Shown: piece by piece, positions 50,941-56,548 of the stretch | Numbering within the stretch: the stretch's first letter is position 1 | How the letters are laid out: the number at the start of each line of letters is the position of its first letter | Origin: Macrostomum lignano | Taxonomy: Eukaryota | Length of the DNA stretch: 64,000 nucleotides | NCBI GenBank assembly: GCA_002269645.1 | Contig: NIVC01002102.1 | Location: 62,001-126,000 of the forward strand | Direction of reading: 5' to 3' | The notes under the pieces: model-generated | What the model saw: the letters and a program-made list of their open reading frames with translations, nothing else | Database searches by the model: none | Told to the model about the DNA's origin: nothing | Made by a program: the position numbers and the translations under genes

Positions 50941-51324
50941 CTTTGTCGACCACATCACTCACTTCTTTGCCAGTCTTGTGCGCCATAAAGCCCACAACGG
51001 CAAAGATGACAAAGCCGCCAAAGATTGAGGTCAGGCAGTTCACGATAGGAACGGCTATGGCATCTCGGTAGCAGTTGTTCTTAAACTTGTTGAAGCTGGA
51101 CATAGTGATGAGGCCGCCCCAGGCTGGGCCCAGTGCGAAAAACACCTGCAGAGCGGCTTCATGCCAGATCTCCAGATTTGCAAGCTTACTCCAAACCGGG
51201 GTGATGTAGAATCGGATGCCTTCCCAGCTTCCAGGTAGCATGCAGTTGCGGACCATCAGGATAGCCAGGAACAGGTAGGGAGATGTGGCCGTGACGTATA
51301 CCACCTTGCCGACTGACTTGACAC
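50941..51324 (-). CDS. SLC6: SLC6 exon (TM5-TM7)
   Basis: GVKSVGKVVYVTAT...IWHEAALQVFFALGPAWGGLITMSSFN...NCLTSIFGGF; CCGCAG acceptor, G|GTGCGT donor. Confidence 0.95.
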
Positions 51325-51371
51325 CTGCGGATAAGCGATTTAAGCAGTTCGAATTTAATCCCCGATTTCTG

Positions 51372-52512
51372 CATCTATCCTATTTGTTACTACTTTATCC
51401 CAATTATCCCAAAGTTATCGCATTTATCCCAGTGATACCCCTCTTATCCCCATCATTCCCAAATTATACCTATCCTATCCCACTTATCCCATTCTATTCT
51501 ATCCCATTTATCCCCATCCTATCCCACTTATCCCCATCCTATCCCACTTATCCCCATCCTATCCCACTAATCCCCATTCTATCCCATTTATCATATCCCA
51601 TCTATCCCATCCTACCTTATTTATCCCCATTTGATCCAATTTATCTCACTTCTATCACATTTATCCTATGATACCTCATTTATCCCCATTCCGAATTATC
51701 CCAATTCTATCGAAAACACATCACATTGATAAATTTTCAACCATGGATGGCCAGGCATTAACATCTATTGTTGAGTTGTTAAACTTTCGCGCATCAGCTA
51801 CCAGGCTATTTTAAACTTTTAAAACTTCAAATAAAAATGCGACCGTTGAAGATCACTGACTGAGACTTATAATTTTCAACCCCAGGAATTGCAGTCAACT
51901 TATCAGATTGAACCGAATTTCGGGCCAAAGAATTATTGGCCAACTTCCGGAGTTCAAACTAATTTGCCCGAATATAGTTCACGATTTGTTAAAACTTTGC
52001 CTGTCAGCTTAAAGTTGAAAGATTTCTAAATTTTCCATCAACTCCTATTCGTGGAAAAAATCACAGATAACCCAAAAATTCCATTCTGAAAGGCTGTAAA
52101 ATTTTGCAAGCGTCTTACGATTTTTAATTGACAATAAATGGCATAAATTAAATGAGATAATGATTAATAATGAGACAGAATAGGTATAAATAAGATAGAA
52201 TAGGTATAAATAAGATAGAATAGGGATAAATGGGATAGGATAGGGATAAATGGGATAGGATAGGGATAAATGGGATAGAATGGGGATAAATGGGATAGGA
52301 TGGGGATACATGGCATAGATGGGATAGGGTGGGGATACATGGCATAGATGGGATAGGGTGGGGATACATGGCATAGATGGGATAGGATGGGGATACATGG
52401 CATAGATGGGATAGGGTGGGGATACATGGCATAGATGGGATAAAATGGGGATAAATGGGATAGGATGGGGATACATGGCATAGATGGGATAAATGGGATA
52501 GGATGAGGATAA
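51372..52512. repeat. Inverted pair of (ATCCTATCCCATTTATCCCC)-type arrays (51372-51705 and 52180-52512)
   Basis: Left arm reads TATCCCATTTATCCCCATCC on +, right arm reads its reverse complement GGGATAAATGGGATAGGA. Confidence 0.85.
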
Positions 52513-52584
52513 ACTCCCCATCAAGAGATTTGCCAACACCAGAAGCGGGAGTCAGGCACAGAAGCACACGGAGGACGAACTCAC

Positions 52585-52697
52585 CCTTGCACAGGCAGGC
52601 GAAGATGAGAAGCCAGGCTCCGATCAGGGACAGCAGGAGGCCCCAGTGGATGCTGCCCAAATTGTCGATGCCATCGGATTGCTTCAGAACGCTGTAC
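52585..52697 (-). CDS. SLC6: SLC6 exon (EL2 end, TM4)
   Basis: RYSVLKQSDGIDNLGSIHWGLLLSLIGAWLLIFACLCK; TACAG acceptor, G|GTGAGT donor; phases 2/1. Confidence 0.93.
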
Positions 52698-52843
52698 CTG
52701 TAGAAGAGATGGAATATCATTAGTGAGATGTCAATATGAAAATCGGTTACAGTAGTAGTGGTAAAAAACTCATATTTATTATGTCTATGGTTGGCATCCA
52801 TCTTAGTTGCATGTCTATGGCCGAAACCCCTGACTCTTCTCAC

Positions 52844-53180
52844 CTCCAGAATTCGTTGGACGAAGTCTGACTGTAATTAACATGCAACGGTGTGCTCGAA
52901 TTGCACCTAGGATTTGCTGGCCAAGTGAAATTTGGCATCAATTGTTCCGTCAAGTTTCTCAAGTGTTCCTCAATTCGAGTCTCGGTGCAATTGCAGGTGT
53001 TGAAATCGTTGTCACACGAGTCCCAGGGAACTCTGGCGGCGAAACTCAGCACCAGGTAATAAATCACCCAGGTGAGAATGATATTGTAGTAGATGCAGAC
53101 CAAGCCGCTGATGATTATCATGCCCCAGCCGACGCCCTTGAACAGGGGACAGATATCCCACAGAGCAAGCGGTGACGCAC
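52844..53180 (-). CDS. SLC6: SLC6 exon (TM3, EL2)
   Basis: GASPLALWDICPLFKGVGWG...CIYYNIILTW...PWDSCDNDFNTCNC...EFW; TTTCAG acceptor, AG|GTGAGA donor. Confidence 0.95.
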
Positions 53181-54930: not shown

Positions 54931-55143
54931 GAGACAGACAGACAGACAGACAGACAGACAGACAGACAGACAGACAGACAGACAAACAGACAGACAGACA
55001 GACAGACAGACAGACAGACAGACAGACAGACACACAGACAGACGGACAACAGTCAGACACACAGACAGACAGACGAACAACAGACAGACACACAGACAGA
55101 CAGACAACATACAGACAGACAGAAAGACAGACAGACAGACAGA
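54931..55143. repeat. (GACA)n microsatellite
   Basis: Direct inspection. Confidence 0.93.
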
Positions 55144-55592
55144 CGTAAAATCGTAGAGAGGACTCATAAATAGACAACAAAGCTGCTCACGTGTCTCTGC
55201 TTGCTTCGTAAAACAACTCTACCCAGTACGTTGTCGGAAATCTCGAACTTGAGAAAGCAAGAAGCAACAGGAATGACAGTAAATCAAATATTAAAAAATA
55301 CACAAGCTTTAAAAATATCTGGGGAGCAGAACAATGTGCATGTAAATATATGAAAAACGTACACTTCTGCTCAGTTCCCTCTAAGTACATTTAGACTTAT
55401 AGTGATTGGCTGACGAAATGGAAAGAATAAGGGGAGAGCGGAGCGGCGAACAGTGCAAGTCCAGCTAATTGAGTTTAGATTGAGAAGTTTAGATAAAGTC
55501 ATTACTCAGACGAAATCAATTAGAATTGGATTAGAGTTATTAAAAATGAAAAAACAACCACTGCGCCGAGAGGCCCCTCGGCGGCTGCTCAC

Positions 55593-55711
55593 CCGAAAAT
55601 TGTCCGATCGCCAGTTCGAGAAAGAACAGCGGCACTCCACAGATTGTCATGAAGACAATGTAGGGGATGAGGAATGCGCCGCCTCCGTTCTTGTAGCACA
55701 GGTAGGGAAAC
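55593..55711 (-). CDS. SLC6: SLC6 exon (TM1b-TM2); missed by the ORF track
   Basis: Hand translation (R)[39 protein letters not shown]; CCTCAG acceptor, G|GTGAGC donor. Confidence 0.95.
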
Positions 55712-55741
55712 CTGAGGGGAGGCGGGTGGAGTGACTGTTAT

Positions 55742-56300
55742 TTGTCTGCCTGTCTGCCTGTCTGTCTGTCTGTGTTAGTGTCTGTCTGTCTGTCTGTCTG
55801 TCTGTCTGTCTGTCTGTCTGTCTGTCTGTCTGTCTGTCTGTCTGTGTCTGTGTGTCTGTGTCTGGATATCTCTCTGTCTGTCTGTCTGTCTGTCTTAGTG
55901 TCTGTCTTAGTCTTCGATTCTTATAGACTTAGTGTCTGTCTGTATGTCTGTCTGTCTGTCTGTCTGTCTGTCTGTCTTAGTGTCTGTCTTAGTGTCTGTC
56001 TGTCTTAGTGTCTTAATGTCTGTCTGTCTGTCTGTCTTAGTTTCCGTCTGTCTGTCTGTCTTAGTGTCCGTCTGTCTGTCTTAGTGTCTTAATGTCTGTC
56101 TTTCTGTCTGTCTGTCTGTCTTAGTGTCTCTCTGTCTTAGTGTCTTAATGTCTGTCTGTCTGTCTATCTGTCTGTCTGTCTGTCTGTCTGTCTGTCTGTC
56201 TGTCTGTCTGTCTGTCTGTCTTAGTGTCTGTCTGTCTGTCTTAGTGTCTGTCTGTCTGTCTGTCTGTCTGTGTCTGTCTGTCTGTCTGTCTGTGTCTGCT
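55742..56300. repeat. (TGTC)n microsatellite with TTAG interruptions
   Basis: Fills SLC6 intron 55712-56330. Confidence 0.93.
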
Positions 56301-56330
56301 AGTCTATCTGTCCTGTCCAGTCCGTCTTAC

Positions 56331-56548
56331 CTCCAGATGGAGCCGAAGCCCACCGCGTATCCCACGCAGCTAAGGATGAAGTCCATGTGGTGCGGCCAGT
56401 GCTCCCGCGGCTCCACCAGCGAGTCCAGGGTGGCCATCGTGTAGGACGACTGGGCGATCGCGGCGACATCGCGACAGTCGGAGTCGGCAGCCGGCAAGAC
56501 AGCGTCGGGGTCCTCGTTAGCCGGGCCGGCCCCATCCTGTTTGCAGTT
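56331..56548 (-). CDS. SLC6: SLC6 exon (N-terminus, TM1a); probable start ATG at 56437
   Basis: [26 protein letters not shown]; TTGCAG acceptor, AG|GTAAGA donor; in-frame ACGATGG in good Kozak context gives about 627 aa. Gly at the DAT-D79 position and AWGG in TM6 point to the glycine/amino-acid subfamily. Confidence 0.9.

What the first reader, a model, noticed from the sequence alone, without database searches (positions are those of the whole stretch)
51134..56341. Intact glycine-type SLC6 transporter missing two Na1/Cl- site residues
Seen: TM1 reads [13 protein letters not shown] (Ser TCC, 56339-56341) where NSS proteins have GLGN; TM6 reads QVFFAL (Ala GCA, 51134-51136) where they have QIFFSL. 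Known: these are the LeuT N27/SERT N101 and LeuT T254/SERT S336 positions, which coordinate Na1 (and Cl- in eukaryotic members); mutating SERT N101 removes Cl- dependence. The Na2 motif (GLDS), TM7 Asn/Ser (NCLTS), TM2 Tyr, TM6 Gln and the R-D outer gate are all kept, and all 8 exons splice in frame without stops. Inference: two changes concentrated on one ion site suggest a transporter with altered coupling (1 Na+, Cl-independent, other cation, or uncoupled/sensor-like) rather than decay.
Basis: partly seen in the sequence, partly recalled or inferred. Interest (0 to 1): 0.78.

Follow-up and report, generated by a model that had tools for sequence, protein, structure and literature searches.

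The report
Flatworm SLC6 transporter with altered Na1
An intact, strongly conserved amino-acid transporter gene of the flatworm Macrostomum lignano differs from its family's conserved residues at only two places, both ligands of one sodium/chloride site, so it offers a natural test of what that site does.

Summary
On the minus strand, eight GT-AG exons (47318-56437) encode a 627-aa SLC6/NSS protein. It matches Pfam SNF (E 5e-194), its best solved relative is human GlyT2 (E 3e-173), and the AlphaFold2 model has pLDDT 88.8.

The window is M. lignano scaffold NIVC01002102.1, gene BOX15_Mlig018799g1. Ser33 (TCC) sits at LeuT N27/SERT N101/GlyT2 N213. Ala289 (GCA) sits at LeuT T254/SERT S336/GlyT2 S477.

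Of 87 alignment columns at least 90% conserved in about 400-500 homologues, the protein departs from consensus only at these two. It is not decaying:
- Three genomic copies are all intact and all carry Ser/Ala.
- They differ at 17 synonymous and 2 non-synonymous sites (dN/dS 0.02-0.07).
- Introns and flanks differ by 3-6%.

Asn-to-Ser is older, because the 74%-identical paralogue Mlig029317 shares it. Ser-to-Ala is specific to this gene.

These are the classic engineered LeuT Na1 mutations (N27S, T254A). The most likely reading is a working transporter with a weakened or unused Na1 site and looser Na1-Cl- coupling, driven through an intact Na2 site. That is inference.

Single changes of this kind occur in about 2-6% of the homologues sampled, so this is a new variant of a known kind. 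Interest is moderate.

The parts
47318..56437 (-). Whole coding span of the SLC6 gene (BOX15_Mlig018799g1): 8 exons, 627 aa
   Evidence: Spliced. All junctions are GT-AG and there is no internal stop. Pfam SNF covers positions 1-522 of 524, E 5e-194. The window is 100% identical to NIVC01002102.1 over 25.9 kb.
56331..56437 (-). Exon 1 from the first in-frame ATG. Encodes the N-terminus and TM1, including [10 protein letters not shown].
   Evidence: Identical in all three genomic copies.
56438..56548 (-). Possible 37-codon N-terminal extension (NCKQDG...SSYT), downstream of a TTGCAG acceptor whose AG lies at 56549-56550
   Evidence: The frame is open. The acceptor fits the M. lignano SL trans-splice motif [T/C]TNCAG, and the SL ends in ATG, which would be in frame (PMC8629364). 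The two differences between copies in this stretch are both synonymous in this frame. Inferred, not shown.
56339..56341 (-). Ser33 codon TCC, at LeuT N27 / SERT N101 / GlyT2 N213 (Na1 side-chain ligand)
   Evidence: The same codon is present in all three copies. The paralogue has TCA.
56345..56347 (-). Phe31 codon, at LeuT L25. A rare (2%) accompanying change in the unwound part of TM1, shared with the paralogue.
55593..55711 (-). Exon 2 (end of TM1 and TM2, including the Cl- ligand Tyr53 at 55660-55662)
52844..53180 (-). Exon 3 (TM3 and EL2, with five N-x-S/T sequons). The GenBank partial CDS begins here.
52585..52697 (-). Exon 4 (end of EL2 and TM4)
50941..51324 (-). Exon 5 (TM5-TM7). Contains Gln285, Ala289, Asn321 and Ser325.
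51134..51136 (-). Ala289 codon GCA, at LeuT T254 / SERT S336 / GlyT2 S477 (its side chain is shared by Na1 and Cl-)
   Evidence: The same codon is present in all three copies. The paralogue has Ser TCT, one step away.
51026..51040 (-). NCLTS in TM7: Asn321 (LeuT N286, Na1/Cl-) and Ser325 (LeuT E290 position, Cl-), both kept
50318..50602 (-). Exon 6 (TM8-TM9). Contains the Na2 motif GLDS (Asp389-Ser390 at 50493-50498) and the outer-gate Asp445.
49183..49490 (-). Exon 7 (TM10-TM12). Contains Glu460, at the GlyT2 E648 position.
47318..47548 (-). Exon 8 (cytoplasmic C-terminus and TGA stop)

Best explanation
This is a functional, selectively maintained plasma-membrane amino-acid transporter. It belongs to the GlyT/PROT/ATB0,+ branch of SLC6 in Macrostomum lignano.

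Its Na1 site has been remodelled in two steps. Asn became Ser in TM1 before the duplication that gave the paralogue Mlig029317. Ser then became Ala in TM6 in this gene only.

Shown here:
- The gene is intact.
- It is under strong purifying selection.
- It keeps the Na2 site, four of the five Cl- ligands, both gates and the substrate-site scaffold.
- It deviates from family-wide conserved residues only at these two positions.

Inferred:
- Two Na1 side-chain ligands are changed: the Asn amide is replaced by a shorter Ser hydroxyl, and the TM6 hydroxyl is lost.
- That lost hydroxyl is the only side chain that bridges Na1 and Cl-.
- Na1 should therefore bind Na+ weakly or not at all.
- Transport would be driven mainly by the Na+ at Na2, with lower Na+ cooperativity or stoichiometry and weaker Cl- dependence than GlyT1 or GlyT2.
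- The animal lives in sea water with very high Na+, where a low-affinity or absent Na1 would cost little. This habitat point rests on my own knowledge.
For: Gene model, family and fold: pLDDT 88.8, pTM 0.87; Foldseek target-normalised TM-score 0.91-0.94 to GlyT2, PROT and GlyT1.

Site mapping: plus PMC13022235. PMC6829555 states that the side chains of N101, S336 and N368 coordinate Na1.

Selection:
- Three copies differ at 17 synonymous and 2 non-synonymous sites; dN/dS 0.02-0.07; binomial p 2e-9.
- Introns and flanks show 3-6% mismatch against 0.6-0.75% in the CDS.
- dN/dS against the paralogue is about 0.1, with dS saturated.
- There is no rate asymmetry.
- Recent constraint is stronger than in the paralogue's own copies (dN/dS 0.27; Fisher p 0.01).

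Specificity: the protein departs at only 2 of 87 conserved columns.

Mutagenesis precedent:
- SERT N101A/C gives Cl--independent transport and lets Ca2+ replace Na+ (PMC4607855).
- LeuT N27S and T254A strongly affect transport and Na+ affinity (as summarised in PMC10707687).
- LeuT T254A blocks the substrate-induced conformational change (bioRxiv 10.1101/283176).
- TuriSERT tolerates N25S and S230A because it appears to use only Na2 (PMC10707687).
- KAAT1 and CAATCH1 show that natural Na-site variation goes with altered cation and Cl- dependence (PMC8310414).
Against: - No ion or transport measurement exists.
- A Ser hydroxyl can ligate Na+, as it does at Na2. The carbonyl of residue 289, Ala28 O, Asn321 and the substrate carboxylate all remain, so Na1 might still be occupied.
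- LeuT N27S still responded to Na+ and substrate.
- The GenBank transcript-based CDS of all three copies starts at exon 3. mRNA evidence for the TM1 exons is therefore missing here; only gene predictions join exons 1-3.
- No orthologue outside M. lignano was found. Conservation of the Ser/Ala pair across species is untested.
- Similar single changes recur in other SLC6 lineages of unknown function. That could mean the positions are more tolerant than the vertebrate literature suggests.
Confidence: 0.5

Rival explanations
1. Ordinary coupling. The Ser33 hydroxyl, perhaps with a water molecule, and the backbone carbonyl of Ala289 still build a working Na1 site. The protein would then behave like a normal 2-3 Na+ / 1 Cl- glycine-type transporter, and the substitutions would be near-neutral variants of a tolerant site.
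For: - Ser and Thr hydroxyls ligate Na+ at Na2 in this family.
- Na1 in GlyT2 can be held loosely by two carbonyls and water alone (PMC13022235).
- LeuT N27S still responds to Na+ and alanine.
- Non-Asn or non-Ser residues occur at these columns in about 4-6% of the homologues sampled. These include scallop GLGS proteins and a Limulus FFAL protein.
Against: - Both columns are 94-96% conserved, and they are the only conserved columns changed.
- In LeuT, N27S and T254A each strongly lowered affinity or coupling.
- SERT N101A/C changes ion dependence.
- The TM6 hydroxyl is a direct Cl- ligand.
Confidence: 0.27
2. A non-canonical role. The protein is kept by selection but acts as an uncoupled uniporter or leak pathway, an exchanger, a carrier coupled to another cation (K+, Li+-like, H+ or Ca2+), or a sensor, rather than as a Na+ symporter.
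For: - SERT N101A permits Ca2+ substitution and uncoupled behaviour.
- KAAT1 and CAATCH1 use K+ with altered Na-site residues.
- Purifying selection does not say which activity is selected.
Against: The Na2 site, both gates, the Cl- site residues other than Ala289 and the substrate-site scaffold are all canonical. This points to ordinary alternating-access Na+ symport.
Confidence: 0.13
3. The expressed product lacks TM1-TM2. On this reading the GenBank partial models that start at exon 3 reflect the real mRNA, so Ser33 is not part of the protein.
For: All three GenBank CDSs, which are built from a genome-guided RNA-seq assembly (PMC5730564), begin at exon 3.
Against: - They are flagged partial and have no start codon.
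- The SL's ATG joined to exon 3 would be out of frame (read directly from the sequence).
- Exons 1-2 show no difference among the copies, while adjacent introns differ by 2.5-12% in comparisons with copy L004.
- The exon 1-2-3 junctions are canonical and in frame.
- The paralogue's complete transcript model includes the homologous TM1 exons with GFGS.
Confidence: 0.06
4. A decaying pseudogene, or a sequencing or assembly error at the two codons.
For: None beyond the two unusual residues.
Against: - The same TCC and GCA codons occur in three separate scaffolds of Mlig_3_7. The same residues appear in proteins predicted from another source (UniRef A0A1I8HWU7, A0A1I8II78).
- The reading frames are intact, dN/dS is 0.02-0.07, and the Ser codon is at least two steps from Asn.
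Confidence: 0.02

Closest known systems
[quoted passage not shown]
   Same: - Best sequence matches (E 3e-173, 9e-164 and 2e-161) and best fold matches, at about 42-46% identity.
- Same Na2 residues, the same Cl- ligands Tyr, Gln, Asn and Ser, the same R-D outer gate, and the AWG loop in TM6 with Trp294.
- Gly291 at the GlyT1 G373 / GlyT2 S479 position.
- A TM10 Glu460 as in GlyT2 E648.
   Different: - Ser instead of Asn at N213, and Ala instead of Ser at S477.
- Phe instead of Leu at L211.
- It is not a one-to-one orthologue of any of them. Its placement among invertebrate homologues is unresolved (bootstrap 11%).
- Its substrate is unknown.
Engineered Na1-site mutants LeuT N27S and T254A, and SERT N101A/C
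   Same: The same two positions, and for LeuT the same two replacement residues. These are the standard tools used to disable or weaken Na1.
   Different: Those are single laboratory mutations in proteins adapted to use Na1. Here both occur together, naturally, and are kept under purifying selection. One of them has been fixed since before a gene duplication with dS above 1.
TuriSERT (bacterial NSS proposed to bind Na+ only at Na2)
   Same: An NSS in which Asn-to-Ser and Ser-to-Ala at these positions are compatible with full activity. It is a precedent for Na2-only coupling (PMC10707687).
   Different: TuriSERT is bacterial and Cl--independent, through an Asp at the N286 position. Its wild type still carries Asn and Ser. 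The flatworm protein keeps Asn321 and Ser325, the eukaryotic Cl--dependent configuration.
Lepidopteran KAAT1 / CAATCH1
   Same: Animal SLC6 nutrient transporters with naturally non-canonical Na-site residues. They show altered cation selectivity and weak Cl- dependence (PMC8310414).
   Different: Different residues are changed (G20 to Ala, A22 to Ser, N286 to Asp), and they belong to a different SLC6 branch.
M. lignano paralogue Mlig029317 (PAA85780 and copies)
   Same: 74% identical, 8 exons, the same GFGS in TM1, and all other site residues the same.
   Different: - It keeps Ser in TM6 (QVFFSL).
- Intron 5 lies at a different position.
- Its recent copies show weaker constraint (dN/dS 0.27).

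Membership tests
SLC6 / NSS (Pfam SNF, PF00209) | Full-length match to the family profile | tested here: met
   Residues 11-550 match profile positions 1-522 of 524: E 4.9e-194, 646 bits against a cut-off of 27.
SLC6 / NSS (Pfam SNF, PF00209) | 12-TM LeuT fold | tested here: met
   AF2 pLDDT 88.8, pTM 0.87. Foldseek target-normalised TM-score 0.91-0.95 to GlyT2, GlyT1, PROT, SERT and DAT structures.
SLC6 / NSS (Pfam SNF, PF00209) | Na2 site (TM1 carbonyls of Gly and Val; TM8 Asp and Ser/Thr) | tested here: met
   G26, V29, I386, D389 and S390 align to GlyT2 G206, V209, L574, D577 and T578.
SLC6 / NSS (Pfam SNF, PF00209) | Canonical Na1 side-chain ligands (TM1 Asn, TM6 Ser/Thr, TM7 Asn) | tested here: not met
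   TM1 has Ser33 and TM6 has Ala289. Only TM7 Asn321 is kept. This lowers 'canonical Na1', not family membership.
SLC6 / NSS (Pfam SNF, PF00209) | Eukaryotic Cl- site (TM2 Tyr, TM6 Gln, TM6 Ser, TM7 Asn, TM7 Ser) | tested here: inconclusive
   Four of five are kept (Y53, Q285, N321, S325). The TM6 Ser hydroxyl is replaced by Ala289.
SLC6 / NSS (Pfam SNF, PF00209) | Extracellular gate salt bridge (TM1 Arg - TM10 Asp) | tested here: met
   R36 and D445 align to GlyT2 R216 and D633.
SLC6 / NSS (Pfam SNF, PF00209) | Na+-dependent substrate transport | not testable with these tools
   Needs heterologous expression and flux or current measurements.
Glycine transporter (GlyT1/GlyT2 orthologue) | Orthology by phylogeny | tested here: inconclusive
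   The best hits are GlyT2, then GlyT1, then PROT. The M. lignano pair forms its own clade (bootstrap 100), and its placement among lophotrochozoan GlyT/PROT-like proteins has only 11% support.
Glycine transporter (GlyT1/GlyT2 orthologue) | Glycine-type substrate pocket (TM6 AWG loop with Trp, small residue at GlyT1 G373, TM3 Tyr) | tested here: inconclusive
   W294, G291 and Y107 are present, and Met394 sits at the GlyT2 T582 / GlyT1 Leu position. This is compatible with a small neutral amino acid but not diagnostic.
Glycine transporter (GlyT1/GlyT2 orthologue) | Glycine uptake | not testable with these tools
   No functional data.

The most novel reading that the evidence does not exclude
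This would be a metazoan SLC6 transporter that selection has kept working without a functional Na1 ion. It would be coupled only through Na2, or through Na2 plus the GlyT2-type third site around Glu460, with Cl- no longer linked to Na+ through the TM6 hydroxyl. That would be the first natural eukaryotic counterpart of the LeuT N27S/T254A double mutant. Its paralogue Mlig029317 would represent the evolutionary intermediate.
Probability: 0.3. Interest if true: 0.65.

Novelty: new variant of a known kind. Interest (0 to 1): 0.5.

Why it matters
The roles of the two Na+ sites and of Cl- in SLC6 transporters are still argued, and mostly from point mutants that cripple the protein. SLC6 transporters are drug targets for depression, pain and epilepsy.

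This gene is a natural protein that carries exactly the two classic Na1-disabling substitutions. It is otherwise canonical at every highly conserved position and is under strong purifying selection. A sister gene carries only the first substitution.

Expressing the pair, and their revertants, would test directly three things:
- whether Na1 is dispensable in a eukaryotic SLC6;
- how the TM6 serine couples Na1 to Cl-;
- how stoichiometry evolves.

The survey also shows that Na1-site residues vary in a few per cent of invertebrate SLC6 proteins. These include an annelid-like clade lacking both Na1 asparagines. The 'strictly conserved' picture drawn from vertebrates is therefore too narrow.

Tried and rejected
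- **Orthologues in other Macrostomum species or flatworms.** The full-length search, the TM1-3 query and the TM1-7 query found nothing closer than 56% identity outside M. lignano. Cross-species conservation of the Ser/Ala pair could not be tested. The 119-aa query returned only short proteins (209 aa or less) and was of little use.
- **50%-representative search.** It gave diversity for column statistics but no close relatives.
- **Phylogenetic placement.** NJ with 100 bootstraps leaves the sister group unresolved (11%). A shared origin with the scallop GLGS proteins or the annelid-like GLGA clade is not supported and is not claimed.
- **dN/dS on the branch after duplication.** dS against the paralogue is saturated (1.3 to above 17 depending on method). 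Only the overall ratio of about 0.1 and the relative-rate tests are usable.
- **GlyT2-type Na3 site as a compensating feature.** W83, M96, A293 and E460 are all present. However, the Glu is found in about 90% of homologues (293 of 329), so it does not distinguish this protein.
- **Literature on the gene ids, or on SLC6 in M. lignano.** Nothing found.
- **Exact look-up of the spliced protein in transcript assemblies.** No RNA-level confirmation of exons 1-2 was possible.
- **Pseudogene or assembly-error reading.** Rejected.

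
Full report
**What is there.** The minus strand between 47318 and 56437 carries eight exons with canonical AG/GT borders. They splice into an uninterrupted 1884-nt CDS of 627 aa.

The protein matches Pfam SNF (PF00209) over essentially the whole profile (E 4.9e-194). Its best solved relatives are human GlyT2 (E 3e-173), GlyT1 and PROT. An AlphaFold2 model built with 55 homologues is confident (mean pLDDT 88.8, pTM 0.87). It superposes on GlyT2, PROT and GlyT1 structures with target-normalised TM-scores of 0.91-0.94.

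EL2 carries five N-glycosylation sequons, as expected for a surface SLC6 protein.

**Source.** The top database hits are Macrostomum lignano proteins. The window is 100% identical over 25.9 kb to scaffold NIVC01002102.1 of assembly Mlig_3_7. The gene is BOX15_Mlig018799g1 (PAA60849.1), deposited as a 5'-partial 'hypothetical protein' whose CDS begins at exon 3.

**The observation.** TM1 reads [14 protein letters not shown], with Ser33 = TCC at 56339-56341. TM6 reads QVFFALGPAWGG, with Ala289 = GCA at 51134-51136.

The alignment to full-length GlyT2 is ungapped across TM1-TM2 (offset +180) and across TM6-TM10 (offset +188). This gives:
- Ser33 = N213 and Ala289 = S477
- Y53 = Y233, Q285 = Q473, N321 = N509, S325 = S513
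- D389 = D577, S390 = T578
- R36 = R216, D445 = D633

In the GlyT2 cryo-EM paper:
- Cl- is bound by Y233, Q473, S477, N509 and S513.
- Na2 uses G206, V209, L574, D577 and T578.
- R216-D633 is the outer gate (PMC13022235).

For SERT, the side chains of N101, S336 and N368 coordinate Na1 (PMC6829555). One nuance applies: the TM1 Asn is an Na1 ligand only, whereas the TM6 Ser serves both Na1 and Cl-.

**Is it more than chance?** I pooled the proteins returned by four searches and aligned them to a family HMM. The sample is not random. It is enriched for the GlyT/PROT-like branch and contains fragments.
- Among non-M. lignano sequences the TM1 column is Asn in 94% of 508 (Ser in 10).
- The TM6 column is Ser in 96% of 393 (Ala in 9).
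- Of the 87 alignment columns conserved at 90% or more, the window protein departs from consensus at exactly two, positions 33 and 289. The paralogue departs only at 33.
- The post-hoc chance that two departures both fall on the three Na1 side-chain columns is about 0.0008.

The changes are therefore concentrated on one site. They are not part of a general erosion.

**Not decay, not error.** Assembly Mlig_3_7 holds three copies of the gene on separate scaffolds: Mlig018799g1 (the window), Mlig000108g1 and Mlig000108g2. This fits the partly duplicated karyotype of the sequenced DV1 line (PMC5730564).
- All three copies are intact, and all have TCC and GCA.
- They differ at 19 sites, of which 17 are synonymous and 2 are not (A316V, T613A). 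Pairwise dN/dS is 0.02-0.07, and the binomial p is 2e-9 against neutral expectation.
- Aligned introns and flanks differ by 3-6%, against 0.6-0.75% in the CDS. The intron figure is somewhat inflated by repeat misalignment.
- Exons 1-2 are identical in all copies, while adjacent introns differ by 2.5-12% in comparisons that involve copy L004.
- Proteins predicted from another source (UniRef A0A1I8HWU7, A0A1I8II78) show the same residues.

**Order of events.** A paralogue, Mlig029317, is 74% identical and also has 8 exons. It has GFGS in TM1 but QVFFSL in TM6.
- The Ser33 codons are TCC and TCA in the two genes. Both are at least two substitutions from Asn AAY.
- Ala289 GCA is one step from the paralogue's Ser TCT.
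- Asn-to-Ser, together with the rare Leu-to-Phe two residues earlier, therefore predates the duplication. Synonymous divergence between the two genes is saturated; dN/dS is about 0.1.
- Ser-to-Ala arose afterwards, in this gene only.
- Relative-rate tests with eight outgroups show no acceleration of this gene.
- Its recent copies are under tighter constraint than the paralogue's (dN/dS 0.27 there; Fisher p 0.01).

**How unusual in the family?** Single changes are uncommon but recurrent:
- Scallop proteins have GLGS or GLGV.
- A Limulus protein has QIFFAL.
- Several 50%-cluster representatives have Ser, Thr or Ala at the TM1 column, or Ala at the TM6 column.
- A well-supported clade of five transcript-derived proteins has Asn-to-Ala in TM1 and Asn-to-Cys/Val at the TM7 Na1 asparagine. 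Its bootstrap is 100, its members are 65-74% identical to one another, and its nearest named relative is from Capitella teleta.
- Changes at both the TM1 and TM6 columns were seen outside M. lignano only in P0424 (Ala/Val) and P0385 (Ala/Met).

The exact Ser/Ala pair was found only here. No orthologue from another flatworm was recovered. The placement of the M. lignano pair among lophotrochozoan GlyT/PROT-like proteins is unresolved (11% bootstrap).

**Most likely mechanism (inference).** The two substitutions are the same ones used experimentally to weaken Na1 in LeuT.
- LeuT N27S and T254A strongly affect transport and Na+ affinity (as summarised in PMC10707687).
- LeuT T254A abolishes the substrate-induced conformational change, which was attributed to loss of the link between Na1 and the E290/Cl- position (bioRxiv 10.1101/283176).
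- SERT N101A/C makes transport Cl--independent and lets Ca2+ replace Na+ (PMC4607855).
- In TuriSERT the same two substitutions are harmless, apparently because that transporter uses only Na2 (PMC10707687).

Na2, the gates, four of the five Cl- ligands and the substrate scaffold are all canonical here. I therefore think the protein is a working Na+-coupled amino-acid transporter. Its Na1 site would be weak or vacant, and its Na1-Cl- coupling would be loosened. The expected result is lower Na+ cooperativity or stoichiometry and reduced Cl- dependence. My confidence is about 0.5.

The pocket is compatible with a small neutral substrate, but this is not diagnostic. It has the AWG loop with Trp294, Gly291 as in GlyT1, Tyr107 and Met394.

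The GlyT2-type TM10 glutamate (E648; PMC4919009) is present as Glu460. It is also present in about 90% of homologues, so it carries no special weight.

**Rivals.**
- A still-functional Na1 built from the Ser hydroxyl, carbonyls and water, with ordinary coupling (0.27).
- A non-canonical activity: another cation, uncoupled flux or a sensor role (0.13).
- A real mRNA that lacks exons 1-2 (0.06).
- Decay or error (0.02).

**Weak points.**
- There are no functional data.
- There is no RNA evidence here for the TM1 exons. The GenBank models derive from a genome-guided RNA-seq assembly and support exons 3-8, including the Ala codon. They are 5'-partial.
- There is no cross-species test.

**5' end.** The reading frame stays open for 37 codons upstream of the first ATG, back to a TTGCAG acceptor (AG at 56549-56550). 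This matches the M. lignano SL trans-splice acceptor motif. The SL ends in ATG, which would be in frame (PMC8629364). The only two differences between copies in this stretch are synonymous in that frame and non-synonymous in the overlapping frame of the upstream ATG at 56535. The protein may therefore begin M-NCKQDG... through an SL-donated start codon. This is a hypothesis.

**Verdict.** This is a new natural variant of a known kind of transporter. It is of moderate interest as a ready-made experimental system, together with its paralogue.

Noticed in passing
window 56438-56550 (- strand): A TTGCAG acceptor is followed by 37 open in-frame codons before the first ATG. The M. lignano spliced leader ends in ATG and would be in frame, so the start codon may be donated by trans-splicing. 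The two differences between gene copies in this stretch are both synonymous in this frame.
   Followed up: partly
window 52844 (start of exon 3); GenBank PAA60849, PAA64884, PAA81715: The deposited CDS of all three copies is 5'-partial and begins at exon 3. The TM1/TM2 exons, including Ser33, are therefore missing from the public annotation.
   Followed up: partly
window 47736-49151, 49529-50283, 50626-50864, 51396-51610, 52186-52513, 54932-55144, 55743-56317, 56702-57205: Every intron except the short intron 3, and the 5' flank, holds a tandem-repeat block. Examples are a 22-bp unit x64 in intron 7, a 22-bp unit x33 in intron 6, (TGTC)n x145 in intron 1, and 27/53-bp units upstream. Intron lengths differ between the three gene copies mainly through these arrays.
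   Followed up: partly
L001 10001-15938 and L006 2001-7769 (paralogue Mlig029317) against window exons 5-6: The paralogue has the same number of exons, but the intron between exons 5 and 6 sits 205 nt further 5' (179+490 nt against 384+285 nt), just before the QVFF codons. This indicates intron sliding, or loss plus gain, since the duplication.
   Followed up: no
proteins P0023, P0028, P0036, P0064, P0065 (Logan transcript contigs, e.g. L002 from SRR25454218): A well-supported clade, nearest to Capitella teleta and so probably annelid, has Asn-to-Ala at the TM1 Na1 position and Asn-to-Cys/Val at the TM7 Na1 asparagine. It keeps Na2 and the TM6 Ser. This is a second, independent natural remodelling of Na1.
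   Followed up: partly
proteins P0281, P0347, P0361 (scallops), P0315 (Limulus), P0424, P0385: Other invertebrate SLC6 proteins carry GLGS or GLGV in TM1, or QIFFAL in TM6. P0424 (Ala/Val) and P0385 (Ala/Met) are changed at both columns. None appears to have been characterised.
   Followed up: no
L001 against L006 (copies of paralogue Mlig029317): The paralogue's recent copies differ at 8 synonymous and 9 non-synonymous sites (dN/dS 0.27). That is clearly weaker constraint than in the window gene's copies at a similar dS.
   Followed up: partly
window 25733-26299 and 36577-37401 (+ strand): ORFs with a BTB_2 (T1 tetramerisation) domain (E 1.5e-21) and an Ion_trans domain (E 7e-32). Together they look like exons of a voltage-gated K+ channel gene lying next to the transporter on the opposite strand.
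   Followed up: no
window about 45560-45960 (- strand): A histone H3-like fragment (…[36 protein letters not shown]…) lies next to what looks like RNase H-type peptide fragments in other frames. This looks like a degraded retro-copy or retroelement remnant just downstream of the gene, and was judged by eye only.
   Followed up: no
window 756-2266, 13430-16424, 17217-18437, 28576-29996, 30831-31779, 32541-33739: These stretches are open in several reading frames at once, with extreme GC or AT skew. They are most likely further long tandem or low-complexity repeat blocks, not genes.
   Followed up: no
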